A DNA stretch of 64,000 nt, from contig NC_068982.1 in NCBI RefSeq assembly GCF_001194135.2, positions 155,631,039 through 155,695,038 of the forward strand, given 5' to 3'. The notes under the pieces are model-generated. The model saw only the letters and a list, made by a program, of their open reading frames with translations, had not been told where the DNA came from and ran no database searches. This stretch comes from Octopus bimaculoides. Lineage: Eukaryota. Position numbers and translations under genes: made by a program. Positions 1 to 38,264 of the stretch are shown piece after piece (within the stretch, counting starts at the first letter, position 1; each line of letters starts with the position of its first letter).

Positions 1-172
1 ACTACACTCTCTGAGTGGTTGGCGTTAGGAAGGGCATCCAGCTGTAGAAACTCTGCCAAATTTAGATTGGAGCCTGGTGTTGCCATCCGGTTTCACCAGT
101 CCTCAGTCAAGTCGTCCAACCCATGCTAGCATGGAAAGCGGACGTTAAACGATGATGATGATGATGATGATG
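1..172 (+). mobile_element. (GAT)n-tailed short retroposon, a 5'-truncated RTE 3' end; one of about 20 copies
   Basis: GAAGGGCATCCAGCTGTAGAAACTCTGCC...CAACCCATGCTAGCATGGAAAGCGGACGTTAAAC(GAT)n. Close copies at 1507-1648, 7960-8093, 9448-9624, 16573-16670, 25501-25637, 28965-29078, 34545-34829, 57440-57758 (+) and 21907-22048, 30355-30485 (-). Diverged copies at 20398-20680, 46622-46915, 47265-47420, 51500-51720, 62590-62760 (-) and 63125-63217 (+). Confidence 0.9.
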
Positions 173-178
173 ACAGAA

Positions 179-518: not shown

Positions 519-647
519 GCAGCATTAGATGTCCTGCAAATGGTAGTGCGAGGAAGTAAGGCACCATTGAGTGATGCACTAGTCCAAGATTGTTTCCCTG
601 CTTCGGTACAATGTATTTTACAAACAGAGGATAATTCCACTATGCAG
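519..647 (+). CDS. IPO9: IPO9 exon (AALDVLQ...NSTMQ)
   Basis: ttctccAG acceptor, GTaagg donor, 129 nt, phase 0-0. Confidence 0.93.
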
Positions 648-3600
648 GTAAGGAAATAATGGTTTAACATTATTCACATCTCTCTCTCTCTCTCTCTTTT
701 TTTTTTTTTTACCTTGATATGATCACCGTCATTTTTATGCTCATTGTCATCCTAATGTCCAAATTTCCATAGTAGATAATGTAGTTTAGTCTTTTAGAAA
801 GTTGCCTTATTAGATGGAACACAAGATGGTGATATATTGAAAAAATCTCTTGTATTACAATAGCTGCTGCTCTTCTGAACGAGGTAGCTACATACTTTAC
901 TTTTTGTGTCCACTCAACACATTAGTTTCTTCTCTCATCACTTCTCTGATTAAATACTCCACTCAATCCTTCTTGTCTTGAGCTGGAATTTTTTCTTAGT
1001 TCATGTTTAGTTTTGAAGATATTAATGAATGATCTAACAGAATATGAAGCGTAGTGTGAGAGGACATGCAGAAGTCATAGGCACTGCTCTGCCACCTCTG
1101 GCATTTTTCAAATGATTTAGTCAGGAAGAAGGAACTGATGAGATTATGATTGATTTTCATGTTTTTAGCTTGTATAAACCGACATTGGCCACAAAAAGTA
1201 ACCAGGAAAGATTAGATAAGTGAATATTTAAAAAAAAAAACATTTGAAAAGACCCTGCTGAAACAAATACTGTTCAATATTATTATGGAGAATTGGGTAT
1301 CACTGCTACGGTGCCAGGAGTTTAAATGCTTGTGTGACAAATAAACAGATAATACAAAATAATGAAAAGTACATTAAGGTGATGAGATGAGTTTTGAGAT
1401 GTAAAGCTTATCTGACTGATGCTAATGGGAATTCCAGATTTTATATGAAGTAAAATATTTAGCCATTTCAAAGTTTTGAATATTTATGAGTATTTGTAAA
1501 TATTTAGGCGTTAGGAAGGGTATCCAGCTGTAGAAACTCTGCCAGATTAGATTGGAGCCTGGTGCAGCCATCTGGTTCGCCAGTCCTCAGTCAAATCGTC
1601 CAACCCATGCTAGCATGGAAAGCAGACGTTAAACGATGATGATGACGATTTACTGCTTTATGAAGTAAAGATGATTCTCAAGTAGTAGCACTTCGATTAT
1701 TTTTGTAGTTTTTCAAGTCTTAGCTTGAAACAAGACAGTTGTCAGTCAAAAGGTTTACTACAGAGATAATTCATTTTATTTGCAGAGTGGTGGAGAGTGT
1801 CTCCGAGCATTTGCGTCTGTTGGACTGGATCAACTCATGGTTTGGCAGGATGATCATGGTAAGATATCATTTCCTTCATCTCCATTGTCTGATCTCTATT
1901 GTCTTCATCATATCCTGTCAGCTACAAAAAACTTGCACTTGTGCTGAGCAAGATGACATACCACATATACCATGCTATTACCAATGACCTAAAGTTATCA
2001 ACAGTCACTGTATGTCTACTCCATCAGTCGACCATAGTTTTGGAAGTATGTCCATGGTTCACCCTTCCATGGGTCTGATCTTAGTAACTTGGTTGACAGG
2101 CCAAGTTACCATCTATAGATATGCTATTAAAATTTAGCTGAAATAATACTAATCTAACACAAATATCTTCTTTCATGCAGCATTAAAGGTAATGGCTGTT
2201 ACCTTTTTGTCTCTGATGAAACCTTAAAATATTTAAAGGTATTAAAAATATAAAATAAACAGTTTTCTCTAATCCTTTATTTCTTGTTAATCTTGTGTTG
2301 ACATGTGCTTTTATTATAACTATTGGGTTGTCTGGAAAATTTGTGCTGATTTTCGAAAAGGTTGTACCTGACTCTAAAATTTGTGGTCTTGTGCCTATGT
2401 TAGAAATTGTTTTATATATGTTTATATATATATATTTCTTTGTTTCCCTCCTAATTTAGGTAAAAATGGTTTGTTCTACATCATCCAGGTGATAGCCAAA
2501 TTACTTGACCCCAAGACTCCTGAGTTTACTGCAACATTTGTTGGCAAACTAGTCTCAGTGATTATCAGTAAAGTTGGTAGTCAGCTTGGAGAAGATCTCG
2601 ACTTGATGCTTAGGTCTGTCTTGGGCAAAATGCAACGTTCAGAAACTTTATCTGTCATACAGGTAAATAATTTAAGACCAAATTTATATTTGTATTTATT
2701 CAATTTTTTTTGCCACACCCCTATTTTTGACGAGAAGGTAATATTGTTTGCAGCCATTCTTTTCTTGCCATGGTGTTGGACAAGTTTTTAACAGTTCAAA
2801 AACCTCTTAAATTTATTAAACATGGCAATTTGTCAGCCCCCACTTCAATTCTCAGCCTATTTCCCACCCCAACTTGCAGTTTTCAATCTTCTTTTGATAA
2901 ATTCTTTAACCTTTACTCTGTTAAATGCAATGCATATTTGTTCACATTGCTTTGAATTAATCATGCAGTGTCTCCTAGCTTTGAGATTTTGACGGTGTGA
3001 TTGTTTATTTTTAGAAGGCATGACAGGGTAAGTGTGAGAGGCTGGATCTCCTCTGTCTAAATGTAAAACAGGTAGAATGTTTTGGCTGGATATGGTTGGT
3101 TTAAATGCTAAAGGGTAAAAAATATACCTCTAATAGTGTGATATACATCAGCTATAAAACATGTCAATACTTCAGATGATAATCCTCATTTAATGTCCTT
3201 TTTGCATGTTGGCATTGATGGACATAATTCTCTAGCTTACCACCTCCTATCAAACCATTCCGACCATATCTGCTTTGGCATGGTTTCTATGGCTTGATGC
3301 CCTTCCTAATGCCAACCAATTTATAGTACATAGTGTACTGGATGCTTTTTACATGGCACCAGCATTGGTATGGTCACCAAGTAACTTGCAAAGGCTATTT
3401 AGCCGCTTTAAACTATATAAAGGGACGGAAACACAAGCGTCTTGCTGCAGAGGAGATACATAAATACCCCAGTCGGAGAGAGAGAGAAATATAGTGGGAG
3501 AAAGCCAGAACATACTTGTAAGGTACAGGTGGATGAATGTAAGTAGTAGTGAAGATTGAAGAGGGTGAGTATGGAGGGAGTTCACGAAAGTGCAAAGTGG

Positions 3601-9600: not shown

Positions 9601-11848
9601 GAAAGTGGATGTTAAACGATGATGAAGTGAGTGAGTTAGTAGTAGGGGAGAAATCTTTGAAAGTATAGTTACTAGAGTAAGATTAGAATGGAGAAAGTTC
9701 AGAGAGTTATTACAAATGTAATATAGCAATTTATTTGGTTGTGGAATTTTTGAACTGTGTAACTGATAATAGAATTAGTCAGATTGTCAATCAAAATGAA
9801 AATACCATGTTTTGTCCTTTTTATCGATTCTTCTCACCCTCCTCTCAATTTTTTTTTTTTTTAACAGGAGGATGAGTTTGAAGAAGGTGATGATGATGAA
9901 GATGAAGTATCTGATGGTACAACGTTGAGTAGTATATTAGAGGATTATGGAGGTGATGGTTTAAATGGTAAGTGTATTACTTGTATGGGGGTGGGGAACT
10001 ATTTTTAGGTTCAAAATAATGAGAGAGCCATTGCATAATTGCTTAACATATTAAGAATAGTGGCTAATTCTTGCTCTTATTACACTAGTCTTTAATAAGA
10101 ATGAACATGGTGGATAATATTATTTAAGATAAACTGAATTTAAAAAAACAGGGTTATCACTGCAAGTTTTTAGTTTAATTATATGAAAATACAAAAGATT
10201 GTAGAATCAGTGTCTCTATGAATAACTGCCTTCTCTCTTTTCTCTCAATATTTGTCTTTCTGTTAGCTTCCATTCTTTAGAAAGAAGTGTGTATGACAGA
10301 ATTTAATAGTCTCTAAAAAAAAAAGATACCTCAGGGTATTTGATTATCTCCCTTCGCGTTTTTCAAATTCAACTTAGATCAGCTTAAATCTTTCATCCTT
10401 CAAGGTCAGTGAAAATAAGCACAAGGACTAACGTTGGTATAATTAACTATAACTTTAAAAGCAATGTCCTAACATGGTGTCAGTTCGATGCCTGAAACCA
10501 GTAAAGAAAAAAATATATAAAGAAAAGCTGAGAGTGGGTTGTTTCAATAAGAACCTCTTAAAAAGTTGTGTGGGATCATAGTATTGCTCTGTCATGTTTG
10601 GCATGTTTCTAACAGACATACAGAAACAGACTGGACAGTGGGCAGAGTAAGACCTGCCCAGACTATTGCATGTCATAATGTGCAGTATGGTTTTCAACTT
10701 GGCCAAACTGTAGAAAATATGGAGTTGTGAGATTGAACCTAGTTGTTCAATTCAGAGCTGACCTGGAATTAAAACAACCTAGAGTATTTAGTTTCGCCTC
10801 TGACCTGATTTTAAATACTACCAACCAAATATTAGTTCCAGGGCCCTTTACATAAAAATATGTCCAACCCTTGTCAGCATGGAAGGTTGGCGTTGAATGA
10901 TGATGAAATATGTGGCCTTATGCCAAAATAAAATTAATATTGTCTTTCTTGGTGTTGATTTAATCAACTATATGCTTCCTTCAGATTTGTTGTGCCAATG
11001 ATAGATAGAAACCAGTATTTTTTCCTGGCAAATGTAGAGTACAATCATGTTCTTGCTAAATCAAGTTTGTGACCTGCAGTCAATTAAGCTACTGATAATC
11101 CCCCCTTGAGGAGAGTCAGGAGAGGGCATAAATATTACTAATTTCTTTTATGAGAAAAAAACTCACTCTTGTGAGAACTTCATGCACCATTGCAGATAGT
11201 CAGTTGGATGATCTTTTTTTGTTGCTAGGGGTGTCTATCTGTGGGTGATCATCTTGATTTTGGATGTTAGGGAACAGTTTATTATATTGACTAACTCCTG
11301 TTGTATGAAAGGCAAAGTTGACCTCAGGAAGACTTACTTTGAGCATAAAAGGCTGTACCTCAAAGCATTTCAGCTGATGTACTGATCTTGTGACATCTAA
11401 CCACCTTTTTCTGTTTTTAATTACCTGTTTTTATTTTATTTTTTTCTTCAGTTCTAAAATCTGGGCTGGATGAAGACGAAGATCCTGATGCACTGGCTGA
11501 CCCAGTTTATCATATTGATCTGCAGGTAATGACTTTCACTTATTCTATTATTTCTTAGGAATACCTAGTTTCTTTTAAATTTTAGTCGTTTCTTAAAATT
11601 TCTGTTTTCTATGTCTAATATTCTAGGTACTCTTGATATTTGACATTGTTGAAAATTCCATATTACCAATGCATTTAAAAAAAAAAATTTTTTTTTTTTT
11701 ATATATAATACCATTTTCTTTCTCTTCCCAGGCATACTTATCAGAATTCTTGCAGTCTTTGTCACAGCAAGCATTTTACAACATGTTTAGCAGCCATCAT
11801 ACCCCAGCTGAGCGACAAGTGTTACAAGCCATTGGTATCCAGTGTTAA
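519..11848 (+). CDS. IPO9: Importin-9, 3' part: nine coding exons 519-647, 1786-1858, 2460-2662, 5291-5457, 6093-6223, 7717-7841, 9868-9967, 11452-11525, 11732-11848 (5' exons lie outside the window)
   Basis: All introns are GT-AG with compatible phases (0,1,0,2,1,0,1,0). The spliced translation ([12 protein letters not shown]...[16 protein letters not shown].../[17 protein letters not shown].../[25 protein letters not shown].../[23 protein letters not shown]...LQAIGIQC*) follows the recalled IPO9 C-terminal half, including the acidic loop. Confidence 0.96.
1786..1858 (+). CDS. IPO9: IPO9 exon ([25 protein letters not shown])
   Basis: tttgcAG acceptor, GTaaga donor, 73 nt, phase 0-1. Confidence 0.93.
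2460..2662 (+). CDS. IPO9: IPO9 exon (KNGLFYIIQ...ETLSVIQ)
   Basis: aatttAG acceptor, GTaaat donor, 203 nt, phase 1-0. Confidence 0.93.
2910..3115 (+). mobile_element. Second, decayed copy of the 8684 MITE
   Basis: Shares the internal sequence (ttcacattg.tttgaatt...agctttga.attttga...gaggctgga) and the right end taaatgctaaaggg. Confidence 0.75.
3180..3990 (-). mobile_element. RTE 3' end (coding terminus, purine-rich UTR, conserved tail) in an IPO9 intron
   Basis: [21 protein letters not shown] on the minus strand at about 3960-3860, continuous with the tail-motif homology at 3180-3390. Confidence 0.7.
4566..4935 (-). mobile_element. SINE family A copy in an IPO9 intron
   Basis: Reverse-strand homology to 36471-36834 over its length. 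Confidence 0.8.
5291..5457 (+). CDS. IPO9: IPO9 exon (SLVMIFAHL...YENKV)
   Basis: aattcAG acceptor, GTgagt donor, 167 nt, phase 0-2; coding frame not shown in the ORF track. Confidence 0.93.
6093..6223 (+). CDS. IPO9: IPO9 exon ([10 protein letters not shown]...RTRSQRNK)
   Basis: ttttacAG acceptor, GTaagt donor, 131 nt, phase 2-1. Confidence 0.93.
7717..7841 (+). CDS. IPO9: IPO9 exon ([22 protein letters not shown]...)
   Basis: ttcttAG acceptor, GTaagt donor, 125 nt, phase 1-0. Confidence 0.92.
8684..8888 (+). mobile_element. piggyBac-like MITE, 205 bp
   Basis: TTAA|CCCTTTAGCA ... TGCTAAAGGG|TTAA: perfect 10-bp TIR and TTAA duplication. Confidence 0.85.
8895..9730 (+). mobile_element. Old RTE RT remnant interrupted by a younger (GAT)n-tailed copy at 9448-9624
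   Basis: DEWLLRAI..., [10 protein letters not shown] before the insertion; [13 protein letters not shown] resumes after 9625. Confidence 0.65.
9868..9967 (+). CDS. IPO9: IPO9 acidic-loop exon ([13 protein letters not shown]...)
   Basis: poly-T tract then aacAG acceptor, GTaagt donor, 100 nt, phase 0-1. Confidence 0.9.
11452..11525 (+). CDS. IPO9: IPO9 exon ([24 protein letters not shown])
   Basis: cttcAG acceptor, GTaatg donor, 74 nt, phase 1-0. Confidence 0.92.
11732..11848 (+). CDS. IPO9: IPO9 terminal coding exon (AYLSEFLQ...GIQC*)
   Basis: cttcccAG acceptor, TAA at 11846-11848, AATAAA cluster at about 12150-12187. Confidence 0.93.
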   Translation, partial: AYLSEFLQSLSQQAFYNMFSSHHTPAERQVLQAIGIQC

Positions 11849-14856: not shown

Positions 14857-17064
14857 TGTATATACACACACAAGAGGTACAGTGGAATAATAGGAAGATT
14901 ATAAGAGAAAGTAGTGTTTGTATGTGGCATTCTTCATCCTCCAAGAGGGTCCTAAACCTTATGTTGATGCCTGCCAAAAGTGCATTGACCAAGGGGCTGC
15001 AGTAGACGAGTCCCTTGGATTTCAAGTCCTTGAGCCTAAAGATCATCACAGTGACTTGAGTCAATGGAAGTTAATTCAAGCAAACTCGAATTAACAGAAG
15101 TTAAATGTTACAGAAATTAATTAGTCTGATAATGATTGCCAGAGTTAACTTTGTTGATCCATGTCTTCACTGGTTTGTCACTTCCTCAAGTTTTATCCAC
15201 TTTAAGTGCTCTACACGTCTATCTATAAAGGTCTCATGTTGAATGACTTGTCAGTCTTATTTTGTCAAGTATTTAAACTTATACAGAAATCCTAACAAAA
15301 AAAGAAAATCAGTCATTTGTGTAGCTAATCATTATGGTATCAGCAGTTACGAGATTTCCTAATACCCTACACGGATAAAGAGTTCTCGGTACCTTATGTT
15401 GCCTCCATCCATTCTAAGTAAGCTGAGAGAGTCAAACACACCTAACTCTATCACTTGGAACGTAGAGCATAATCCTGTAAACCAAATTCTAAAGTCTTCT
15501 TCCTTTGTATTTCTGCGAAAAGTGCAATCCTATTTAGCACCTACAATATCCTCGACCTAAAAACAGCTCATCTCACATTTCTGGCACAATAACTCCATTC
15601 TCTTGAAAACGAGACCCCCACCACACACACAAATTTCCGTCTACTTGAACCGACCTTTATTATTATTATATGTAGAATGATTCACTCCTCACCAAGTTCT
15701 TTATACTTTTATTTATGTAGTTGTAACTGTTCTAACTCTCAGCTGCTGCAAATACCTTTATACGTTTAAACAATTGGTGTCTGTACATCCCCATATTTCT
15801 ATCTCTGAATGGATATATATATATATATATATATAGTCCTCATTAGGGATTATATAATCCAGGGTATTCCACTGGTTTAATACGTATCATATAATGGTGA
15901 AGTCATTGGTATATGTTTAGGATTACTGAAATTTTTAATGTTGAAGGAAAAATAAGGAGCAGAAAATGAAGAATAAATGGATGTAATTACTGATTTATTT
16001 TGCATGTTGTAGAAAAATGATGCTTTTTTTTTTAAAAAAAAACATTACAAATAAATAAATTAATTAATTAAATATTGATTTATTTATAATGTTTTTTTAA
16101 AAAAAAACACCATCTTTCTACAATATGCAAATAAATCAGTAATTACATTCATTTTTTTATCTTTCTATTAGGTGAAATATGTATGAATCATAGAAAATAT
16201 ATATATATATATAGATAATTGCATAGCATATAAAATACAGAATACATGTATATTTTCGATATGTATATATCATAATTTTCATATGACTAATATCTCTGTG
16301 TGAGTACGTGTGTTTTAAAATATATGCATATGTACATATATATAGAGTATATGTATATATATATATATAATATACATATGTGTGTGTGTATGTATTTATG
16401 TATGTGTGTATATGTATATGTATCTCTCTTCCTTTCTCTCCCTCCCCCTCTCTCTCTATATATCTATATATATATATATGTGTGTATGGTCATTTGTTTT
16501 CCATGCTAGTATGGTTTAGACATTTGTGGAGCATAAACGTGTAATATATGTGTGTGTGTGTATATATATATATTGGAGCCTGGTGTAGCCATCTGGTTTC
16601 ACCAGTCCTCAGTCAAATCGTCCAACCCATGCTAGCATGGAAAGCGGACGTTAAATGATGACGACGACGATACACTCACATATGTATGCCTATGTGCATA
16701 CTTGATATTTTCTTTTTGCACATGTAATTTTAGCTCCCCTGTAATGTTATTTGGAACCACCTTTTCTCCCTCACACACTCCCACACAACTACATCAACAT
16801 CAACCTATTCAGCGATCCCTTCCCATGCCACACATCCTCTCACAATAAAGGCATTCAAGCACCACTTAATGACCCCTATTTCACCTTCAAATAAAAAGTA
16901 CTTCATTCTTTCTTCCTATTAATTATTAACCTTAAAATGGTGTTATTAATATTAGTGCTACGTTTAAGATGGTGAGCTGGCAGAATTGTTAGCATGCTAG
17001 GTGAAATGGCTAGTAGAATTTTGTTTGGGACTGAACCCAGAACTATAGGTTCGGGAAACAAACT

Positions 17065-19011: not shown

Positions 19012-20310
19012 TGTGGTGGGAGGGACTGTCTAACACAGCTCCTCCACCACTTTGATGACATCTTAAATGCACTGAGGGCTCCAACGCAGATGTCATATAC
19101 CTTGATTTCAGCAAGGCCTTTGACAAAGTCAACCACAATATTGTGTTAAGAAAACTATCCAATGCTGGAGTCGGTGGAAAGCTACTTCAATGGATTAGGC
19201 ATTTCCTAACAAAGAGGACCCAGCATGTTGTGGTTGATGGCAACCACGCAAAACCAGCAAAAGTCATCAGTGGAGTCCCGTAGGGTGCTGTGCTGGGTCC
19301 ACTTTTTTTTTATTGTCTGTATCAATGACATTGCAGATTCCATTGAACATAGCACCATTAAAATATTTGCAGATGACTCTAAGCTCCAGAAAGTCATTAA
19401 GGGAGCATATGATCAAACGATGCTTTAATTGGACCTATGCCCAGTGGGCACAAATGAACAATATGCAGTTAAACGAAGAAAAATTTGAGCTCATCCACTT
19501 TGGAAAAGAGGGCACACTCAAACAACCATATACATTACCGTTGGGAGACCTACTTGAACCGTCAGATAATATCAGAGACTTAGGTGTAACTGTCGACAGT
19601 AGCCTTAGCTGGAGTGTGCACATCAACGAAAAAGTCAATGTTGCCCACAAAATGTGCTCATGGATCCTCAGAACTTTTCAATGTAGGGGTCATGAAACCA
19701 TCATCCTTCTCTTCTCCACATTCGCTAGGCCCCACCTTGAATACTGCTGCCCACTGTGGTCCCCCTACAAAAACAAAACATAATGAGGATAAAAGTGCCA
19801 CAAAGATCGATCACAAAAAAAATAAATGGCATGATGGGACTTGATTATTGGGCTCGACTTAAACAGCTGAAGCTCTATTCTCTGCAACGTCGCCATGAGC
19901 GATAAATTATTTGCACCATGTGGAAAATATTCCACCACTATTATCCAAATGATATCGGTATTATGTTTACAATTCACCCAAGACTAGGCCCCCATGGAAT
20001 GTGTCCCCTACAAAGGTCAAGATCACATCACATAGGAACACTGCGACACAATTTCTTCACTACAAATGGTCCTGCACTTTTCAATGTTATCCTGAAAGAG
20101 ATTAAAGTAGAAAAAGACCCCACAACTTTCAAACGGTACCTGGACAAATTCCTCCAGGAAATACTGGATAAACCACCTACACCTGGATATGTCTCAACTA
20201 ACAACAACTCACTGCTTGAGTGGTCCATGGTGTCCCGAAATAATTAACTAAAAGACTTTTCCAGGTGGTGCTATTGAGTTAATCATGGCCTGGGCTGTTA
20301 ATGGCCGAAA
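19012..20310 (+). mobile_element. 5'-truncated CR1/L2-group LINE (RT domain to 3' UTR), frameshifted
   Basis: CLTQLLHHFDD, YLDFSKAFDKVNH, SGVP*GAVLGPLFF, IFADDSK, RDLGVTVDSSLSW, FARPHLEYCCPLWSP. Confidence 0.9.
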
Positions 20311-22048
20311 CTAATGTAAGTTATCTTCTAGGTTATAACTTACATTAGAGAGAGAGAGAGAAGGAAAAGAGGGAGAGAGAGAGAGAGACATATACATCAT
20401 CATCATCATGTAATGTCTGTTTTCCATGCTGGCATGAGTTAGATGGTTTAACAGGAACTGGCAAGCCAGAGAGCTTAGGAAGAGCATTCACTTTATGGCT
20501 GAATGCTCTTCCTAATGCTAACCACTTTATTGAGTATATTGAATGTTCTTTATGTGACGCCAGCATGGGTGCTTTTTATGTAGTGCCAGCAGCACAGGTG
20601 CCTTTTATGTGGTGCCAGCACAAATTTTTTTCCACTTGGCACCAGCACTCATAGGGTTGCTAAGTAACTTGCAAAACAAGGATGTACCTACTGAGAGAGG
20701 AAAAGAAACTGAGAGAAATGGCTGTGTGCCAGGTGAGAAGTTGGAGTATTATTGAGGGACAAAGATAGTGGTCTTACTACAGAGGACAAAGAAAGAGAGG
20801 AAGATGAGTGACAGAAAGAGACAGTCAGAGAGAGAGAGAGGGGGGGAGAGAATGAGAACCTAACCACTTGGAACAGATTGGTGGACTATAAGTAGTACAG
20901 AAGAGATAGAGGAGATGTTCCATAAGAGTGTGAGGTGAGATATTTGGAGATAGTAAGAGGAACTGGAGGAGCCTGCAGTAGGTGGTGGTGGTTTTGGGAA
21001 GATGGGTTGTAGGTGAATCCTTTTAATGTCTACTTTTCCATGCTTGTATGGGCAAGACAAAATTTTGTTGAGGCAGATTTTCTATGGCCAGTTGCTCATC
21101 CTATCCCCAACCCTCACTTGTTTCCAAGTAAGGTAATATTTCCCCATGTCTGGACATGTTTTCACAGAAGATTAGGAATGAAGGACTCTGCTTGTATGAC
21201 AGAGATATTTGTTTATGACTATTGTGTGATGTCAAGGGAAAGAGAGAGTAACACACACACAAGATGGGCTTCTTTCAGTTTCTTATTTCGTTAATCCCCA
21301 GTATGTAACTGGTACTTAATTTATCGACCCCGAAAGAANNNNNNNNNNTTCAGTTTCTTATTTCGTTAATCCCCAGTATGTAACTGGTACTTAATTTATC
21401 GACCCCGAAAGAATGAAAGGCAAAGTCGACCTCGGCGGAATTTGAACTCAGAACGTAACGGCAGATGAAATACTGCAAAGCATTTTGCCCGGTGTGCTAA
21501 TGTTTCTGCCAGCTTGCCAAGCTTCTTTCAGTTTCTGTCTAACAAATCCACTCACAAGGCTTTGGTTAGTTTGGGCTATAGCAGAAGATACTTGCTTAAG
21601 GTGCCACATGGTGGGACTGAACCAGGAACCATGATGATTAGTTTAAAATAATTTCAAGAAAAACACGTTTACTGATGAGGAGGAGACTCAATACTAAAAG
21701 TAGTAAAATTTATAATAAAATTCAGTTTCACTGTGATTTAGAGTTTTATTAAAGTTTTACCTGACAGCTTATTCAACCAGTCAACTCATTGAATAAGTAT
21801 TGAGGCAAAATCGAACCCACTGAAAATGAATTTTATAATTATATATGTGAGTGTGTGTGTGTGGTCTTACTCTTGTACTTACAATGTGGAATGAGTGTGT
21901 TTTATTGTATCATCATCATCATCATCATCGTTTAACGTCCGCTTTCCATGCTAGCATGGGTTGGACGACTTGACTGAGGACTGGTGAAACCGGATGGCAA
22001 CACCAGGCTCCAATCTAAATTTGGCAGAGTTTCTACAGCTGGATGCCC

Positions 22049-22740
22049 NNNNNNNNNNNNNNNNNNNNNNNNNNNNNNNNNNNNNNNNNNNNNNNNNNNN
22101 NNNNNNNNNNNNNNNNNNNNNNNNNNNNNNNNNNNNNNNNNNNNNNNNNNNNNNNNNNNNNNNNNNNNNNNNNNNNNNNNNNNNNNNNNNNNNNNNNNNN
22201 NNNNNNNNNNNNNNNNNNNNNNNNNNNNNNNNNNNNNNNNNNNNNNNNNNNNNNNNNNNNNNNNNNNNNNNNNNNNNNNNNNNNNNNNNNNNNNNNNNNN
22301 NNNNNNNNNNNNNNNNNNNNNNNNNNNNNNNNNNNNNNNNNNNNNNNNNNNNNNNNNNNNNNNNNNNNNNNNNNNNNNNNNNNNNNNNNNNNNNNNNNNN
22401 NNNNNNNNNNNNNNNNNNNNNNNNNNNNNNNNNNNNNNNNNNNNNNNNNNNNNNNNNNNNNNNNNNNNNNNNNNNNNNNNNNNNNNNNNNNNNNNNNNNN
22501 NNNNNNNNNNNNNNNNNNNNNNNNNNNNNNNNNNNNNNNNNNNNNNNNNNNNNNNNNNNNNNNNNNNNNNNNNNNNNNNNNNNNNNNNNNNNNNNNNNNN
22601 NNNNNNNNNNNNNNNNNNNNNNNNNNNNNNNNNNNNNNNNNNNNNNNNNNNNNNNNNNNNNNNNNNNNNNNNNNNNNNNNNNNNNNNNNNNNNNNNNNNN
22701 NNNNNNNNNNNNNNNNNNNNNNNNNNNNNNNNNNNNNNNN
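22049..22740. other. Assembly gap (others: 21339-21348, 44160-44169, 57770-58555, 62254-62290)
   Basis: Runs of N. Confidence 1.
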
Positions 22741-22769
22741 ACATGACAGAAACAAGTAAAGCAATAAAA

Positions 22770-22813
22770 TCTATGCCATTTTCATCCCAAGCAAAGCCGG
22801 GTATCTCTGCTAG
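22770..22813 (+). mobile_element. Helitron-type 3' terminus (possibly a 44-bp minimal Helitron)
   Basis: CCCAAGCAAAGCCGGG decayed hairpin, 8 nt, then CTAG|T; A|TC lies 44 bp upstream. Confidence 0.55.
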
Positions 22814-22891
22814 TATATATATAAATGTGTGTATACATATATGTATATAATAAAAAATATATGAAGCATTATGAATAGTAAGAGTACTTAC

Positions 22892-23040
22892 TGCAGGCAA
22901 ACCAGGAGGAACTTTGTCAGGTGAAGCCTGAAATATACTTATCAAGGTTGGTAAGAGACGCTGCTGTAAAGGGGTAGTACAGTGGGCATTTTCAGCCAAA
23001 ACTTTTACCATATCCTCCACCAAACTGACAATTAATGGGT
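22892..23040 (-). pseudogene. IPO9: Isolated, inverted IPO9 exon (DPLIVSLVEDMVKVLAENAHCTTPLQQRLLPTLISIFQASPDKVPPGLPA): duplicate or misplaced exon
   Basis: Open frame matching the recalled IPO9 segment (DPVVASLAQDIFKEL...[24 protein letters not shown]) that immediately precedes the exon at 519. Canonical GTAAGT donor in phase 0. The expected acceptor position reads ctctTG rather than AG; an alternative in-phase AG lies at 23066-23065. Confidence 0.8.
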
Positions 23041-24192
23041 CAAGAGTTGTCTCATGTAGGAGGACTAGAAAGTCCCTTTGATTGTATATCAGTTCATATT
23101 CAGTTACTATTCTCCTAGATGGGTAGATTGCATTGTTGATTGTAGTGTCTATATGTCTTGTTCAAATGTTTTCATTTTGGTATGGTTTTTGTTGTTGGAT
23201 GACCTTCCTATGACCAAACAAAGTAGTATTGGATCTACTTTATCTATCACTGGTAATAGGGAGGTTATCACATGCAAGGAAAATAGTCAAGCTTGATCAA
23301 TGTTGACCTTGGTCTATACAACAACAATAACATCAACAACATTCCAAAATAGCAATAACAATTTAATTCTTCCTCTTTCTGATACAAAGCAATATAATTA
23401 TTTATAAATCTCTTACAAACTAAATCATCATGATCATCATCATCATCACTATCATCATCAACGAATGTTAAATGATGATAATAATGATGATGATTAAGTT
23501 TGTGATAGATCTATGAGTTGCTAGGTGTGTTGGTGGAGGGGCACAGTAGCTTGAACTATAAAAATAACTACAGTGTAATTATTACTATGGCAAATATTTT
23601 GTTAATAGATTTGTGGAAGAAGACAATAGTTACATAGGAAACACTAGGTCAAAAAATATAATGAAAAGTGTGAGAGAAAGAAAAAGTGAAGCTGAAAATA
23701 ACATTGTTATGAGGGGGAAAAAATGATTGATCAACAGGGAAATAAAATATACAATCCCGATCATTATTTTACAAGAATAAGAGTAATATTACATCCTTAT
23801 GGATAAACAAACACACTGCAACAGTGTAATAACAATATAATTGAAACAAACAGTAGTAACCACATGGAACATAACAACTATCTTTTAAAAAACAGCAATT
23901 CAACATGCTAACTCAAACTGTAAAATTTGAACTCCAACTTTGAACTATCAACCTCAGACCGCTACTATTTATATATAGTGGTCCAGTCCATTCTCGCCAG
24001 GGGGCATCATACTCTCACACAACAAGTAATTAGTATTACAGCGGAATGTTGTATTTCTGACCACTAAACCATGAAACGGTAGGTGGTGGTGGTGGAACTT
24101 GTGATGAGCTTTGTCAGATGGTTTGCCCAGAGTTACAATACAGAAAACTGAAGTAAACCTGACATTATGAGGTCAGTTGTCCAGTACCTTAA

Positions 24193-24373: not shown

Positions 24374-25325
24374 TTAACATCAATCACACTCATTTTGCTT
24401 CTAATTTGAATTAAATACATAATAATAATGGGTGAGCTGGCAGAATCATTAGAGCATTGAAAAAATGCACTGCAGTATTTGTTCTAGCGCTTTATATCTT
24501 GAATTCATATCCTGCTGAGGTCAACTCTGCCTTTCCTCTTTTGGTGTTGATAAAATAAATTATCAAGTACTACATTCAATGATTTTGATCACCAGCCATC
24601 CCACAATTTCCAGGTCTTGTGCCCAGAATTATTATTATTATTAATTCTAACACAGACACCAGGCCAAAAAAATTTGTGAGGGAAGAACAGTTGATTACAT
24701 TGATCCCAATATAATTGGTGCTTCATTTCATTTACTCAAGAAAGATGAAAGGCAGAGTGAACCTCAAATAATAATGGTTTCAAATTTTGGCACAAGGCCG
24801 GCAGTTTGGTGGGGAGGGGCTAAGTTGATTACATCAGCCCCACTGTTCAACTGGTACTTATTTTATGGACCCCAAAAGGTCGAAAGGCAAAGTTGACCCT
24901 GGTGGCAGTTGAAATTGGAATGTACAGATGGACAAATGCTGTTAAGCATTTTGCCAGGTGTGCTAAAGATTCTGCCAGCTTGTCATGTAATGAACCTCAA
25001 ATAATAATAATAATAATAACTCTAGCATGAAGTTGTAGTAGCTGTTGTGTGGTGCATTTTTTTACTCACAAGGATTAGGTTGACACAGAGCACTCACAGA
25101 AGACATTTGATGCTATGCTGTATGATTGAATTCAGAATCTCATGTTTACAAAGCAAACTTGTTAATAATTTAGACATGCTTGCATCCATCAAATAATGCA
25201 CTTGCACACATCCTAGTACAGGCATATATATATATAGATAGGGTGATAAAGTGAATATTAATTCAATTTAAAACCAAGTGGCCTAGCATATAAAAAAATC
25301 TGAAAATTCAGAAAAAATTGTATTC

Positions 25326-25464: not shown

Positions 25465-25503
<39 letters not shown>

Positions 25504-26149
25504 AAGGGCATCCAGCTGTAGAAACTCTGCCAAATCAGTTTGGAGCCTGGTGTAGCCATCTGGTTTCACCAGTCCTCAGTCAAATCGTCCAACCCGTGCT
25601 AGCATGGAAAGCGGACGTTAAACGATGATGATGATGATATATACACATATATATATAATACATACATATACACAAAAAAATATTGGTATGATACATGGTA
25701 TATAAATGATACTGAATAGCATGGAGAAAGAGATACTGATTTAAAGATAAAACTGTAACAATAAGCATTATGACTTCCAAATTTGGTCTAAAGCTAGAAA
25801 TTAGTAAGGGAGAGTGTACAGTTGACTGAATGAATCTCATTATATTACCTGCAGTTATTTTATGAAGCATAATGGAAAGATAGGTAAAGATGAACCTAGT
25901 AGGATCTGAACTTTGAATACACAGATTGAAAGATAACAGTCTGCTAGGTATTGAGTACCAAGATGCTACTGTTTGTGCCATACTTTTGCTTTAGATACTG
26001 ATAGTTAAATCCACTGATACCACAGTGCACACTGGTTTGGATTGAATCGATCCCATGGAATGTCACTGTTACTTATTTTAATGCCACTAAAAGGATGAAA
26101 GGTCAAGTAATCCTGGTAGATTCAAATACATACTGTAACAAATAATATA

Positions 26150-28595: not shown

Positions 28596-29236
28596 CTTTT
28601 ACTTGTTTCAGTCATTAGACTGTAACCATTTAGTCGAATGAATCGACCCCAGTACTTATTATTCTTGTTTATCCTGGTACTTATTCTGTTGGGTCCCTTT
28701 AGCTGAACTGCTAAGTTATGGCAACATAAACACACCAACACCAGTTGTCAAGTGTTGGGGACAGACACATGCACATAAATATATATATATACATATCTGC
28801 AATTATTTGCTAAGTGGTATGAATTTTACAATTTGTAAATAAAAATATTTTTTTATACGTTTAAAGCTTATAAGTGATCACTGTGTATTGACTAAGTTAA
28901 ATAGTCTAATATTAGGGCGTATAAGTCCTTGGCAGAAAAAAGTAGGATTTGCCATATATATAAATTTAGATTGGAGCCTGGTGTTGCCATCCGGTTTCAC
29001 CAGTCCTCAGTCAAATCGTCCAACCCATGCTAGCATGGAAAGCGGATGTTAAAAGATGATGATGATGATGATGATGATAAAAGGCTTCTTTCAGTTTTTT
29101 TCTACCAAATCAGTTTGCAAGGCTTTGGTTAGCACTGAGGTTATAGTAGAAGACACATGCCCAAGGTGCCATAGTGGAACTGAACTCAGAAGCATGTGGT
29201 TAAGAAGCAAGCTTCTTACCATATAATCATGCCTGC
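28596..29236 (-). mobile_element. SINE family A copy split by nested insertions, including a (GAT)n element (28965-29078, +)
   Basis: 3' half at 28596-28776, 5' half at 29081-29236. Confidence 0.75.
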
Positions 29237-30156: not shown

Positions 30157-30500
30157 ATTCTTTTACTTGTTTCAGTTATGCTGGAGTACCACCTTGAAGG
30201 GTTTTAGTTGAACAAATCAACTCAAGGATTTATTTTTTAAGCCTAGTACTTCTTCTATCGGTCTCTTTTGCCAAGTTGCTAAGCTATAGGGATGTAACAC
30301 ACCAACAGCAGTTGTTAAGGAGTGATGGGAGGGACAAACATAGATACAAAGAAATCATCATCATCATCATCATCGTTTAACGTCCGCTTTCCATGCTAGC
30401 ATGGGTTGGACGATTTGACTGAGGACTGGTGAAACCGGATGGCAACATCAGGCTCCAATCTAATTTGGCAGAGTTTCTACAGCTGATATATATATGTATG

Positions 30501-31876: not shown

Positions 31877-32449
31877 TTAATTTCTGTTGTTATTGTTAAC
31901 TGCAATAATTTGTTCGGTGAGCCAGCTAATCCCTTCACTAACACCATCACCGGTCAGTGCGTTACTAGAACAGATATGCCACGCTCGGATCTTAAGTTGG
32001 TCTAATCCTAACAGTTCGACGCATTTCAGCTTGGAAATGGAATCTCTCATATCCATCTTATTAGCATAAAACAGCAAAGGGACGTGGCGGTTCTTGATAT
32101 GTTGGTGTGTGAGTAAATGATCCAGTTCATCTTTGGCCACAACCATTCTTAAGAGGTCACTACTATCGATGACGAAGATAATACCATGGCAATCCTTGTA
32201 GTAATGTTCCCATAGACTACGATAGCGACCCTGGCCTGACATATCAAAGGCCGAAAACGACAAAGATTTTGTTTGAAATCGTTCCACATTAAAACCAACA
32301 GTCGGGACAATATCCTGAGATCTTATGTCCGAAGGTTTAAGATAGTTTAAAATTGTACTTTTACCACTGTTATCCAAACCGATGACTAAAATATTAGCCT
32401 CTTTCCGTTTCAAGCCGAACCATCGAGCAAGTGTATCTAATATTCCCAT
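31877..32449 (-). CDS. ARL6: ADP-ribosylation factor-like 6 (BBS3) small GTPase, single coding exon, 190 aa
   Basis: N-terminal MG, P-loop GLDNSGKS, switch-II FDMSGQGRYRSLWEHYY, NKMD, and ARL6-typical MVVAKDELD; uninterrupted ORF. Confidence 0.96.
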   Translation of the reverse strand: MGILDTLARWFGLKRKEANILVIGLDNSGKSTILNYLKPSDIRSQDIVPTVGFNVERFQTKSLSFSAFDMSGQGRYRSLWEHYYKDCHGIIFVIDSSDLLRMVVAKDELDHLLTHQHIKNRHVPLLFYANKMDMRDSISKLKCVELLGLDQLKIRAWHICSSNALTGDGVSEGISWLTEQIIAVNNNNRN

Positions 32450-34544: not shown

Positions 34545-34829
34545 ACTACGTGAAAAGACATTCGAGCGAGATTGTTGCCAGTGCAGGTGGCATGTAAAAT
34601 ACACCATTTTGAGCATAGCCATTGCCAGTACCGCCTGACTGGCCTTCATGCCGGTGGCACGTAAAAGCACCCACTACACTCTCGGAGTGGTTGGCATTAG
34701 GAAGGGCATCCAGCTGTAGAAACTGCCAAATCAGATTGGAGCCTGGTGTAGCCATCTGGTTCACCAGTCCTCAGTCAAATCGTCCAACCCATGCTAGCAT
34801 AGAAAGCGGACGTTAAACGATGATGATGA
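34545..34829 (+). mobile_element. Longer copy of the (GAT)n-tailed retroposon
   Basis: Near-identical to 57440-57758, including the 5' extension TTCGAGCG...GTTGCCAGT...AAAAGCACCCACTACACTC. Confidence 0.88.
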
Positions 34830-35159
34830 TCCCACTCACTTAGTCCAGAAAACCACAAAGATAGCAGCACCAACAACTTCATTAGCTCCATGTTGTGCTG
34901 GTATGCACACTTCAGTGAAAATTTCAGAATAACAACTGTTGTACTCTGAACAAGCCCATTTCCACTGTGACAATTATCAGAATCTTCAGACAGACTGGAC
35001 AATGGAGAAGAAAGTGTGTCCATATTAACACACTGCCCTACATTCAAATAAATCACTATGTCAGTGTGTGCAATATGGTCCTCTCTCAGAGACATAGTAT
35101 TTCTGAAGCATTGGATCTGTTGATTAGACATAATCATTCAACTAATTAATTTTATGAAT

Positions 35160-36165
35160 AGGATCATAGCTCAATTAGGACCAGAATTAGATTAAATGAG
35201 ATGCAGTTTGGGTTTGTGCCAGAGAAAAGTAATATGGCTTGCCATCTTCCTAGTGTGACAGCTGCAGAAGTATCTAACCAAAAGTAAACCATTGTACTTA
35301 GCATTCATTGACTTTGTGAAAGCCTTTGACAGAGAGAGTTGCTCTGTAATCTGGTTGTTTCCAAAGAAGTTAGGTGTAGATAAATGGCTTGTTAGAGCTG
35401 TACAAACCATGTATAAAGGTGCTGTCAGTAAGGTGAGAGTCAGCTATAAGTACAGCGATGACTTTAGGAGTTCATTAGGGCTTGGTTCTCAGTCCCCTCT
35501 TACTTCTCCAGGCCATAACAGATGAATTTAAGACTGGCCTGTGGGAACTACTATTTGCTGATGACCTCACTTATAGTGGAATATGTAACAGAAATGGAAA
35601 AGAAATTCCAGGTACAGAAGCAAAATCTGGAATGAGAGGGCCTTAAAATTAACTTAGAGAAGACCAAAGTTGTAATTAGCAAGAAAGTAGATAAGAGTAT
35701 CTTTCCATATGGTAAATGGTTTGGCTCAATATGTACGAAAGGTGTTGGAAGGAATTCTATTTGATTACATGGTGCAAGCTATGGACACATAAAAGGTGCA
35801 GTAGAATCAGTGGAAGTTTAACAGAAAGTAGTCTTTGTATGTGGTAGATGCGCAAGTACAACAAAAATATAAGGATGCATGGCAATTAGATTTTTTCAAA
35901 TACCCAGAAGACTCTCTAGTGGTTGTAGATAGTTTTTGTTACCTAGGTGACCTAGTTAGCAGTTGAGGAGGATGTTCTGAAAGAATAGTTTGCTAGAATA
36001 AGAATAGGATGGAGAAAGTTCAGAGAGCAAGTACTTTTGTTGTCAATAAAAGGCCTTTTAGTGTGAAAGGGAGATTGTATGATGCTCGTGTAAGAAATGG
36101 CTATGCTCCATGGTAGTGAGACTTGGGCCCTGAATGCAGGGGACATGTGAAGACTGGGGAGGAAT
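35160..36165 (+). mobile_element. RTE-clade LINE RT remnant
   Basis: MQFGFVP, YLAFIDFVKAFDR, KLGVDKWLVRAVQTMY, WELLFADDL, FCYLGD, YDARV. Confidence 0.85.
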
Positions 36166-36470
36166 TAACAAACAAGAGTAAATGTTTAAAAATTTATCCT
36201 TTTCACATTAATTCCATATATATAAAACTAAAAATAAATTTAAAATTACAAAAATACTTTTATAATTTACTACACCCACCATAGAAATCTCTTCTTTCCC
36301 ATATACTCACAACAAATTGTGTACAGAGAAAAAAATCTAAATGTAGATTCATTAAATTGCTGTGATGAACATATTCACGACAGAAAAGCAATGAAACCCT
36401 AAGCATTAAAATGATGACTGTTCTGTTCTTGTAATAGTTAAAAATTTTTTTAAGATTATTGCATATAGGG

Positions 36471-36834
36471 TGCAGGAGTGGCTGTGTGGTAAGTAGCTTG
36501 CTTACCAACCACATGGTTCCGTCCCACTGCGTGCACCTTGGGCAAGTGTCTTCTACTATAGCCTCGGGCCGACCAAAGCCGTGTGAGTGGATTTGGTAGA
36601 CGGAAACTGAAAGAAGCCCATCATATATATGTATGTGTGTCTGTGTTTGTCTCCCCCAACATCGCTTGACAACCAATGTTGGTGTGTTTACGTCCCTGTA
36701 ACTTAGCAGTTTGGCAAAAGAGACCAATAGAACAAGTACTAGGCTTACAAAGAATAAGTCCGCAGGTCGATTTGCTCGACTAAAGGCGATGCTCCAGCAT
36801 GGCCGCAGTCAAATGACTGAAACAAGTAAAAGAG
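36471..36834 (+). mobile_element. Near full-length tRNA-derived SINE family A (CORE-like central block; probably octopus OR-type)
   Basis: A-box TGGCTGTGTGGT, partly deleted B-box, ACCTTGGGCAAGTGTCTTCT core-like block, internal (TA/TG) spacer, GAAACAAGTAAAAGA tail, TATAGGG direct repeats at 36464-36470 and 36835-36841. Confidence 0.85.
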
Positions 36835-38264
36835 TATAGGGAGTTAAATTATTAGTTTATTAAGTAAATATAGTACATGGACAGGACGTGTCCTGTCTGT
36901 ACTAGATTGTTCTATATATTATGTTTGGACAACTTTACAAACCAGCAAGGAGTCATATTGTTTTAAAAGAAAATGCTTAGTTCTAGATGAAGCAGACTTG
37001 TGATTAAAGGCCTTCAAGCCATGACCATCAAGTTTGTCCAGACAGTTTATCTTGGAAAACATTACCAAGTGTTTTTCCTTTTTAAAGACAGTGTGATTCG
37101 AGAGATTTGGCTATTTCTAGCAAAGTCAGTAATAACATTAGCTTGAAGAGAAAATGTTTCAACTTTTAATTATAAATCATGAATTGATAGGATTGTTTAG
37201 GGACTGCTTTTTCAGAGCTGTTTAAACTGATTGAATAAATCTACAATCAAAAGCACCCAGGGGACTCTTTTATCCATTGGGAATCTATTTTTTTTGGTAG
37301 ATTGGGCAACCACACAAAAACTTCCTCAACACAGCAACTGTACTGGATTTCTTTACATCAGCAGACTTTAATTTTCAACTAGATAAACTGTAATTTAAAA
37401 GACATTATGACTATTCAAATCCATGAACGCAATATTAACTTTTGAAATATATTTCTCAGAAGAGGATTACTCAAGTGATAGAATCCATTTTCTGGTCCAT
37501 GGGTGTCTTTAGTAGAATTCACTGTTGCAAGTTACCAGGATTCACTATATTGGAGGCCTTTGTAAAAGATCATAAGCACTGTCCTTCTTCCATTAGCCAC
37601 AAAAAGGAAGCATAAATAATTAGTTTTTTTAATGGTAAGGTTTCAAACTCTTCTTAGCCCATCTAATTGCAATGTAATTACAACAGGACCAACATCATAA
37701 AATTCCTTAATTCAATATGTTCATGTTAATCTGTTACCTATTTTAGCCTCGTTAATCACATCTATGTCCAATTAGATGTTAGCCTACTTACTAAAATTTT
37801 GACACAATTCAATAGTTTAACTTTAGTGCAAGGAAGGGGAGGAAAAATGTCAAAGCATTAAATGTAAAAATGTTCAAAATAAAGATATAACAATTAAATA
37901 TTTAAATGTGTATCTTTTCTTTTGTTAAAACATATCAATCATAATTTCCTTCCTATATCAACTGAATTATTTGCGCTTGTATTGCCATAGAATGAGACCA
38001 GTAGCCTGATCAGTCCTAGGCAAAAGTAGGAACGATACAACTTCTGTTGGATCATGAATACTGAACAAATGAACAAGATGGATTTAAAAAAAAAAAAAAA
38101 AGACAACACGATGTAAACAAACAATGTTACTAAAAGTGCATTGATAGAATTTTCGGTACTGAAAGGATACCCAAAATTAAATGAAACACACAGACTGTTT
38201 TATAGGAAGAGTTAACTAAAGGAACATAAAAAGGACAATATTGTAAGCATTCTTATTTATTTCA

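What the first reader, a model, noticed from the sequence alone, without database searches (positions are those of the whole stretch)
22892..23064. Orphan IPO9 exon: the exon expected just before exon 519 sits inverted 11 kb downstream of the stop codon
Seen: a stop-free 149-nt minus-strand exon encodes the IPO9 segment that directly precedes AALDVLQ (519). Its GTAAGT donor is phase 0, matching the phase-0 acceptor at 518. Where the acceptor is expected it reads ctctTG, not AG; an in-phase AG 24 nt upstream would add 8 non-homologous residues. I found no other IPO9 exon on the minus strand in 23100-64000. Inference, in order of likelihood: a recent inverted single-exon duplication, a scaffolding error next to the 22049-22740 gap, or a real rearrangement needing trans-splicing or giving a natural antisense transcript.
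Basis: partly seen in the sequence, partly recalled or inferred. Interest (0 to 1): 0.7.

Follow-up and report, generated by a model that had tools for sequence, protein, structure and literature searches.

The report
Dead inverted copy of IPO9 exon
A stray, back-to-front copy of one importin-9 coding exon lies 11 kb past the end of the octopus gene; it is most likely a recent, non-working duplicate made during DNA repair, not part of the working gene, so it is a minor curiosity.

Summary
Window 23040-22892 (minus strand) encodes the 49-50 residues of importin-9 that directly precede the exon at 519. It has a GTAAGT donor but TG where the acceptor AG should be.

The window is Octopus bimaculoides GCA_001194135.2, a Hi-C rescaffolding of the 2015 short-read assembly.

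- An outgroup octopod contig carries both exons co-oriented, 1.5 kb apart, with a normal acceptor.
- Gap-free assemblies of O. sinensis and O. vulgaris are colinear with the window across this spot and have no IPO9 exon there (an "empty site").
- Homology to those species stops abruptly at about 23059, inside unique sequence and inside a contig. A 19-nt filler follows, then the exon and 151 nt of its intron, then a 692-N gap.
- Across the gap lies an old SINE shared with the sister species. Here its sequence is 100% identical to the SINE in the IPO9 intron at 32-171.

Best reading (about 0.72): a real, recent, O. bimaculoides-specific, non-functional inverted partial duplication, probably a templated repair event seeded by SINE homology. 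An assembly artefact remains possible (about 0.2). Trans-splicing is very unlikely. The parent exon upstream of position 1 could not be seen. Low to moderate interest.

The parts
22892..23040 (-). Orphan copy of the IPO9 coding exon (human residues 619-668), 149 nt, with an open frame
   Evidence: Against outgroup contig L001 there are 8 nt differences in 150 nt: 6 synonymous codons and 1 non-synonymous codon.
22741..22891 (-). Copied start of the intron that follows this exon. The GTAAGT donor is at 22891-22886. The piece runs into the gap.
   Evidence: The first ~64 nt align to the L001 intron start. The donor is conserved in L001, L004/5 and L007.
23041..23059 (-). 19-nt junction filler CTACATGAGACAACTCTTG. 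It occupies the place of the acceptor, reading TG instead of AG with no polypyrimidine tract.
   Evidence: It has no homology to the sister species, to the IPO9 intron of the outgroup, or to anything else held. Pyrimidines in -20..-3: 10/18, against 12-15/18 at the real IPO9 acceptors in the window.
23060..23784 (.). Native intergenic flank ('B flank'), orthologous to O. sinensis and O. vulgaris. Homology ends abruptly at its left edge.
   Evidence: blastn 90% identity to L008 15145-15842 and L009 15135-15831. The alignment shows an abrupt break after ...TTTCTAGTCCTC. The last 200 nt are 93-95% identical.
22049..22740 (.). 692-N scaffold gap that hides the interior of the block
   Evidence: The sister species have 407 nt between the breakpoint and the SINE position equivalent to window position 32. 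The window has about 1010 nt, gap included.
21909..22048 (-). SINE_b. The insertion is old and shared with the sister species, but its sequence here is 100% identical to SINE_a (32-171).
   Evidence: This is the only 100% pair among 11 copies (next best 95.8%), and the pair shares 2 private variants. Orthologous SINE_b in L008/L009 differs at 9 positions plus 2 indels in the first 80 nt, while the A flank is 96-97% identical.
21709..21908 (.). Native flank on the other side ('A flank'), orthologous to the sister species. It starts right after the (GAT)n tail.
1..171 (+). SINE_a, cut at its 5' end by the window start. It lies in the IPO9 intron 347 nt upstream of the exon at 519 and is the presumed homology seed and template.
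   Evidence: It is absent from the outgroup intron, whose homology to the window begins at window position 391.
519..650 (+). IPO9 exon that should follow the orphan exon (human residues 669-711). The rest of the gene runs to the stop at 11846-11848.

Best explanation
The orphan is a real, recent, O. bimaculoides-lineage-specific, non-functional inverted copy of part of the IPO9 gene. It lies in the space between the convergent genes IPO9 (+) and ARL6 (-). The working exon is predicted to lie about 0.8-1 kb upstream of window position 1, as in other octopods.

Proposed mechanism (inferred):
1. A double-strand break occurred next to an old SINE (SINE_b) 10 kb downstream of the IPO9 stop.
2. The broken end invaded the similar SINE in the IPO9 intron (SINE_a), which lies 21.7 kb away in inverted orientation.
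3. Repair synthesis copied out of SINE_a through the upstream intron and the exon.
4. Synthesis stopped at or near the polypyrimidine tract in front of the exon.
5. The new end was joined to the other broken end by end-joining, which left a 19-nt filler.

This one event would explain the inverted orientation, the nearness to the parent, the rewriting of SINE_b to SINE_a sequence, the loss of the acceptor and the filler.

Shown: the sequence identities, the breakpoints, the empty site in sister species, the missing acceptor, and the canonical arrangement in an outgroup.

Inferred: that the parent copy exists upstream, the repair mechanism, and what lies in the gap.
For: - The window is byte-identical to GCA_001194135.2 CM046602.1.
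- The canonical arrangement is seen in one 3065-bp contig of an outgroup octopod. It has both exons co-oriented, a 1482-nt intron and a ttttAG acceptor.
- The acceptor AG is conserved at the same base in three other lineages. Only the window copy has TG.
- O. sinensis and O. vulgaris loci without any N are colinear with window 42-20 kb and have no IPO9 sequence at this spot.
- Homology to them ends abruptly at about 23059, in unique sequence about 157 nt from the SINE start and inside a contig. A 19-nt filler with no source follows.
- SINE_b is shared with the sisters, so it is old. Yet here it is 100% identical to SINE_a, including 2 private variants. It differs from the orthologous SINE_b at 11 sites in 80 nt.
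- Of the 8 nucleotide differences from the outgroup exon, 6 fall in synonymous codons and 2 in the single non-synonymous codon. The copy therefore left a constrained exon only recently.
- The assembler did not merge a perfect 65-nt contig overlap at 21339. It is therefore a conservative joiner, and a seamless chimeric join in unique sequence is unlikely.
- The flank carries ARL6, WDR18 and SMSr on the minus strand, so it is not an IPO9 intron.
Against: - The parent exon upstream of window position 1 was never seen, so 'duplicate' rests on inference.
- The assembly is short-read based with Hi-C only (PMC9068888).
- The copy sits 151 nt from a 692-N gap.
- The SINE side of the block shares at least 57 identical bases with the true SINE_b. 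That is the kind of stretch where a k-mer assembler can take the wrong path.
- Two identical 140-nt stretches in two contigs show that some assembler step writes the same sequence twice.
- The start of the copy coincides with the exon's first base to within 0-1 nt. This is unexplained by chance and only loosely explained by polymerase stalling at a pyrimidine tract.
- No reads were available to confirm either junction.
Confidence: 0.72

Rival explanations
1. Assembly artefact. The exon fragment is the genuine and only exon, or a second write-out of it. The short-read assembler or gap closer placed it in the wrong gap because read pairs anchored in the intronic SINE were attributed to the near-identical SINE at 21909-22048.
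For: - The copy is 151 nt from a 692-N gap.
- Across the gap, the SINE copy is 100% identical to the intronic SINE and in the orientation expected from the true locus.
- The local structure comes from the 2015 shotgun assembly with only Hi-C added (PMC9068888).
- Other gaps in the window lie in repeats, and one is an unmerged 65-nt overlap.
- True SINE_b and SINE_a share at least 57 identical bases at the tail end, enough for a k-mer path error.
Against: - The junction at 23040/23041-23059 is inside a contig, in sequence that is unique in the window and orthologous to the sister species right up to the break.
- The junction carries a 19-nt filler that occurs nowhere else. A k-mer chimera needs shared sequence at the join, and there is none.
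- A misplaced genuine exon would keep its AG acceptor and pyrimidine tract. This one has neither.
- The pipeline did not even merge a perfect 65-nt overlap.
Confidence: 0.2
2. LINE-mediated retrotransposition of an IPO9 pre-mRNA piece, primed at the tail of the intronic SINE ('5' transduction'), giving a new SINE plus upstream sequence elsewhere.
For: One end of the block coincides exactly with the end of the (GAT)n tail of the SINE. The copy retains intron sequence.
Against: - The SINE at this site already exists in O. sinensis and O. vulgaris with the same 3' flank, so it is not a new insertion.
- There is no target-site duplication (sequence).
- Landing 22 kb from the source in a genome of over 2 Gb would be a very unlikely coincidence.
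- The sequence upstream of the exon is not the preceding exon: alignment score 15 against a shuffle mean of 19 +/- 3.4.
Confidence: 0.03
3. This is the only, working exon. It is used by trans-splicing, through the AG 24 nt upstream, or after a real inversion of the 21.7-kb segment between the two inverted SINEs.
For: The frame is open and the donor is perfect. The AG at 23066-23065 is in phase, with a CTGAT branch-like motif upstream. Whether a second copy is present was not shown.
Against: - There is no acceptor at the conserved site, and the pyrimidine tract is weak at both candidate sites (9-10 of 18).
- The upstream flank is ordinary intergenic DNA, orthologous to the sister species, followed by ARL6, WDR18 and SMSr on the same strand. 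No IPO9 exon for residues 1-618 occurs in 41 kb.
- IPO9 exons on both sides are under purifying selection, and the canonical arrangement is ancestral.
Confidence: 0.02

Closest known systems
Templated insertions and ectopic gene conversion with copied flanking sequence at repaired double-strand breaks (SDSA/MMBIR-type events seeded by dispersed repeats such as Alu or SINEs)
   Same: - The donor lies nearby in cis.
- The orientation is set by the repeat.
- One end lies inside repeat homology and the repeat is converted to the donor's sequence.
- The other end is an end-joining junction with a short filler.
- The ancestral 'empty' state is kept in sister taxa.
   Different: The mechanism is inferred from one assembly. 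The interior lies in a gap, the donor exon is outside the window, and no reads were checked.
Gene-fragment duplicates (pseudo-exons, unprocessed partial pseudogenes)
   Same: An exon plus flanking intron was copied at the DNA level. It lacks a splice signal and the other exons, and there is no evidence of use.
   Different: The copy is very small (about 0.3 to 1.1 kb) and inverted. It lies just downstream of its own parent gene, inside what O. vulgaris annotation treats as the parent's 3'UTR.
Small-contig misplacement or inversion next to repeats in short-read scaffolds
   Same: It is next to a gap, a SINE sits at the contig end, and an identical repeat is written in two places.
   Different: The decisive junction is inside a contig in unique sequence, it has a filler, and the splice acceptor is missing.
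Inverted-repeat editing-site complementary sequences for ADAR in cephalopods
   Same: An antisense copy of a coding exon within the same transcription unit would pair perfectly with that exon.
   Different: Known complementary sequences are usually intronic and near the edited exon. Neither transcription through this copy nor editing was tested here.

Membership tests
Working IPO9 exon in its gene | AG acceptor at the conserved position, preceded by a pyrimidine tract | tested here: not met
   The window has TG. L001, L004/5 and L007 all have AG at the same base. Pyrimidines: 10/18, against 12-15/18 for the real acceptors.
Working IPO9 exon in its gene | Same strand as the next exon and directly upstream of it | tested here: not met
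   It is on the opposite strand, 22.4 kb downstream of the exon at 519. The outgroup has both exons co-oriented 1.5 kb apart.
Working IPO9 exon in its gene | Open frame, GT donor, and coding sequence under purifying selection | tested here: met
   This is also expected of a recent copy.
DNA-level partial duplication / templated insertion | Site is empty in close relatives, with flanks colinear on both sides | tested here: met
   L008 (O. sinensis) and L009 (O. vulgaris) contain no Ns, are colinear with the window, and have no IPO9 hit.
DNA-level partial duplication / templated insertion | Parent copy present elsewhere, with high identity to the copy | not testable with these tools
   The parent exon would lie upstream of window position 1. 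Three look-ups found no record near the window start. Only the SINE part can be compared, and it is 140/140 identical.
DNA-level partial duplication / templated insertion | Junction supported by sequence reads | not testable with these tools
   There is only indirect support: the junction is inside a contig and in unique sequence.
Processed retrocopy | Introns removed and neighbouring exons fused | tested here: not met
   The copy retains the donor and at least 64-151 nt of intron. The upstream frame is unrelated to IPO9 residues 541-618.
SINE/LINE retrotransposition with transduced flank | New insertion flanked by a target-site duplication and absent from relatives | tested here: not met
   The SINE and its 3' flank are present in both sister species. 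No duplication is seen at the two ends.
Scaffolding / assembly artefact | The anomalous join coincides with a gap or a repeat | tested here: inconclusive
   The right side meets this: a gap plus a SINE. The left junction does not: it is contig-internal, unique and has a filler.

The most novel reading that the evidence does not exclude
In O. vulgaris the annotated IPO9 gene range runs on for many kilobases past the coding exons. It reaches within 1.7 kb of ARL6 and covers the orthologous insertion site.

If the O. bimaculoides transcript is similar, this inverted copy lies antisense inside IPO9's own 3'UTR. The same RNA would then carry a coding exon and its perfect reverse complement. That gives a 149-bp duplex in the mRNA, and possibly up to about 1.1 kb in the pre-mRNA if intron and SINE were copied as well.

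In a cephalopod this would be a newly born ADAR substrate that could recode or hyper-edit importin-9, or trigger an RNAi-type response. It would be a natural example of how an editing-complementary sequence for a coding exon arises.
Probability: 0.1. Interest if true: 0.6.

Novelty: new member of a known kind. Interest (0 to 1): 0.27.

Why it matters
For annotation: this exon copy should not be stitched into an IPO9 model or read as evidence of trans-splicing. The region around the 692-N gap in CM046602.1 should be flagged for checking.

For biology: if the junctions are confirmed, it is a clean, datable example of a SINE-seeded templated repair event. The ancestral state is preserved in two sister genomes. 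The event copied a coding exon, in inverted orientation, into the gene's own downstream region. SINEs are very abundant in octopus genomes, so such events may be a common source of small inverted duplicates and of new double-stranded RNA structures for the editing machinery.

As a single dead fragment it is of limited importance.

Tried and rejected
1. Reaching the sequence upstream of window position 1. Exact-product look-ups of three window ORFs near the start (540-659, 2381-2791, 5300-5461) found nothing on record. Protein searches with the exon peptides returned only short ORF fragments from other species and no O. bimaculoides IPO9 model. The representative search gave no full-length octopus IPO9. 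The parent exon therefore stayed unseen.

2. Spliced-retrocopy idea. It is rejected because the 40 in-frame codons upstream score below shuffled controls against human IPO9 541-618.

3. 'Whole 21.7-kb segment flipped between two inverted SINEs' model. It is rejected for three reasons. The flank beyond the orphan carries ARL6, WDR18 and SMSr on the same strand. No IPO9 exon for residues 1-618 occurs in 41 kb. The flank is ordinary intergenic DNA in the sister species.

4. Independent insertion of two identical young SINEs. It is rejected because SINE_b is shared with the sister species, where its sequence differs.

5. Source of the 19-nt filler. None was found in the window or in any held locus.

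6. Literature. The SRA run numbers were not found in any paper. The 2015 genome paper is not held, so assembler details rest on my own recollection and were not used as evidence.

7. ARAGORN found no tRNA-like head in the SINE.

Full report
**What is there.** The minus strand of window 23040-22892 is a stop-free 149-nt segment, or 150 nt with the G at 23041. It encodes DPLIVSLVEDMVKVLAENAHCTTPLQQRLLPTLISIFQASPDKVPPGLPA and is followed by GTAAGT. Joined to the plus-strand exon at 519-650, it aligns without a gap to human importin-9 residues 617-711 (PDB phmmer E 1.1e-24). I confirmed that my human IPO9 probe is identical to the PDB chain. With it, tblastn places the 3' part of the gene on the plus strand from 519 to the stop at 11846-11848. 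The only other hit is the orphan exon at 23041-22892 on the minus strand. Nothing matches residues 1-618 on either strand.

**Where the window comes from.** The intronless ARL6 ORF at 32449-31880 is on record in Octopus bimaculoides GCA_001194135.2, chromosome CM046602.1. The returned 20.6-kb locus is byte-identical to the window, gap included. Window position x corresponds to record position x + 155,631,038. That assembly is the 2015 shotgun assembly rescaffolded with Hi-C (PMC9068888), so the local contig and gap structure is short-read.

**The normal arrangement.**
- A 3065-bp Logan contig (L001) from another octopod carries both exons on one strand. They are separated by a 1482-nt intron with a ttttAG acceptor and a long pyrimidine tract.
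- That species is about 87% identical to both O. bimaculoides and O. sinensis/vulgaris around ARL6, so it is an outgroup.
- The acceptor AG and the GT donor are at the same bases in two further cephalopod or mollusc lineages (L004/5, L007). Only the window copy has TG.
- Both candidate acceptor sites of the orphan have 9-10 pyrimidines out of 18. The six real IPO9 acceptors in the window have 12-15.
- Homology between the window copy and L001 starts at the exon's first base, covers the exon, and continues about 64 nt into the intron. Upstream there is none.
- Of the 8 nucleotide differences from L001, 6 fall in synonymous codons and 2 in the single non-synonymous codon. The sequence therefore evolved as a constrained exon until recently.

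**The surroundings.** To the right of the orphan, the minus strand carries three genes. ARL6 matches at PDB E 1e-75, WDR18 at 5e-93, and sphingomyelin synthase-related protein in four exons at 6e-120. The orphan therefore lies in the space between the convergent genes IPO9 and ARL6, not in an IPO9 intron. This rules out the idea that the whole 21.7-kb segment between two inverted SINEs was simply flipped.

**The empty site.**
- The ARL6 protein of O. vulgaris and O. sinensis led to 20.6-kb loci from both assemblies, neither containing any N.
- Both are colinear with window 42 kb to 20.4 kb at 90-97% identity, and neither contains any IPO9 coding sequence.
- In both, the flank ...GGGACTTTCTAGTTCTC continues with GCATACTTTTCC.... 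About 157 nt of non-SINE sequence follows, then a full SINE (SINE_b) ending in (GAT)6, then ACAATAAAACACAC....
- In the window the same flank is 93-95% identical up to ...TTTCTAGTCCTC (about 23060).
- Then comes a 19-nt stretch, CTACATGAGACAACTCTTG (23059-23041), that matches nothing held. After it come the IPO9 exon, 151 nt of its intron and the 692-N gap.
- The break is thus inside a contig and inside unique sequence, and it carries a filler. These are marks of a real end-joining junction and are hard to get from a k-mer assembler.
- That assembler also did not merge a perfect 65-nt overlap at the 10-N gap at 21339.

**The other side.**
- Left of the gap, 21909-22048 is SINE_b with its native 3' flank, which is 96-97% identical to the sisters.
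- Its body, however, is 140/140 identical to the SINE in the IPO9 intron at window 32-171 (SINE_a). The identity includes two variants found in none of nine other copies, and a (GAT)7 tail.
- Against the orthologous SINE_b of the sisters, it differs at 9 positions plus 2 indels in the first 80 nt and at none in the last 57 nt.
- An insertion old enough to be shared by three species cannot be identical to another copy by chance. Sequence was transferred from SINE_a to SINE_b, either in the genome or by the assembler.

**Most likely mechanism (inferred).**
1. A break occurred near SINE_b.
2. The end lying in the SINE invaded SINE_a, 21.7 kb away and inverted.
The geometry gives exactly the observed orientation.
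4. Synthesis stopped at about the pyrimidine tract in front of the exon.
5. The end was joined to the other side with a filler.

This accounts for the orientation, the proximity, the converted SINE, the filler and the missing acceptor. What lies in the gap is open. It could be the rest of the intron plus the 5' part of SINE_a (replacement), or the ancestral 407 nt plus about 285 nt more insert (pure insertion). Also unexplained is why the copy starts within a base of the exon boundary.

**Rivals.**
- An assembler artefact (about 0.2) is supported by the gap, the short-read origin and the duplicated SINE. It does not explain the contig-internal junction in unique sequence, the filler or the lost acceptor.
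- Retrotransposition primed at the SINE tail is contradicted by the pre-existing SINE_b, the lack of a target-site duplication and the 22-kb distance.
- A spliced retrocopy is contradicted by the retained intron and by the unrelated upstream frame.
- Use as the working exon, by trans-splicing or the upstream AG, is very unlikely.

**Limits.** I could not see the parent exon upstream of window position 1, and no reads were available. 'Duplicate' and 'real' are therefore well-supported inferences, not observations.

**A possible consequence.** The O. vulgaris annotation has UTRs built with Iso-Seq and PASA (PMC10700109). It gives IPO9 a gene range that reaches within 1.7 kb of ARL6, with no coding hits in its last 8.3 kb, and this range covers the orthologous site. 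If the O. bimaculoides transcript is alike, the copy lies antisense in IPO9's own 3'UTR and could pair with the coding exon. That would be of interest in an animal with heavy A-to-I editing. It was not tested.

**Verdict.** This is a new instance of a known kind of event and is of low to moderate interest.

Noticed in passing
window 31880-32449 (-) and 38268-39608 (-): ARL6 (190 aa) and WDR18 (447 aa) are each a single uninterrupted ORF. ORFs of the same length are called in O. sinensis and O. vulgaris, so both genes appear to be intronless in Octopus, side by side on one strand.
   Followed up: partly
window 45364-55992 (-): A complete sphingomyelin synthase-related (SAMD8/SMSr) gene in about four coding exons: roughly 55992-55372, about 50.8 kb, about 47.7 kb and 45.7-45.4 kb. 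PDB 8ijr, E 6e-120.
   Followed up: partly
window 21274-21338 and 21349-21413: A perfect 65-nt duplicate lies on either side of a 10-N gap. It is an unmerged contig overlap, a small assembly artefact that adds 75 spurious bases.
   Followed up: yes
window 1-171, 1507-1649, 7958-8093, 9472-9625, 16566-16671, 21909-22048, 25500-25638, 28962-29085, 30354-30485, 34673-34830, 57601-57761 and weaker copies: A very abundant SINE with a (GAT)n tail, at least 15 copies in 64 kb. Its 5' region is built of ~66-nt tandem units. ARAGORN finds no tRNA-like head. Several contig ends and gaps fall in it.
   Followed up: partly
L009 12272-20573 (O. vulgaris), equivalent to window ~29950 down to ~20000: The annotated O. 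vulgaris IPO9 gene range extends to within 1.7 kb of the ARL6 stop. It has no coding similarity in its last 8.3 kb, which implies a 3'UTR of well over 8 kb, possibly about 18 kb.
   Followed up: no
window 19313-19783 (+): A 156-aa ORF that looks, by eye, like a fragment of a LINE reverse transcriptase. It was not checked against any protein family. Colinearity with the sister species is lost just to its right (window ~20378), so it may be a lineage-specific insertion.
   Followed up: no
window 172-391: A second repeat family directly follows SINE_a. Other copies are at 21371-21517, 24789-24982 and 56212-56646. Like SINE_a, it is absent from the outgroup's intron, so this IPO9 intron gained at least two elements in the O. 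bimaculoides lineage (or the outgroup lost them).
   Followed up: no
window 35600-36840 versus L008 5318-7139: The order of matching blocks differs between O. bimaculoides and O. sinensis/vulgaris: 36470-35879, then 35879-35612, then 36836-36476. This suggests a small local duplication or rearrangement involving a repeat.
   Followed up: no
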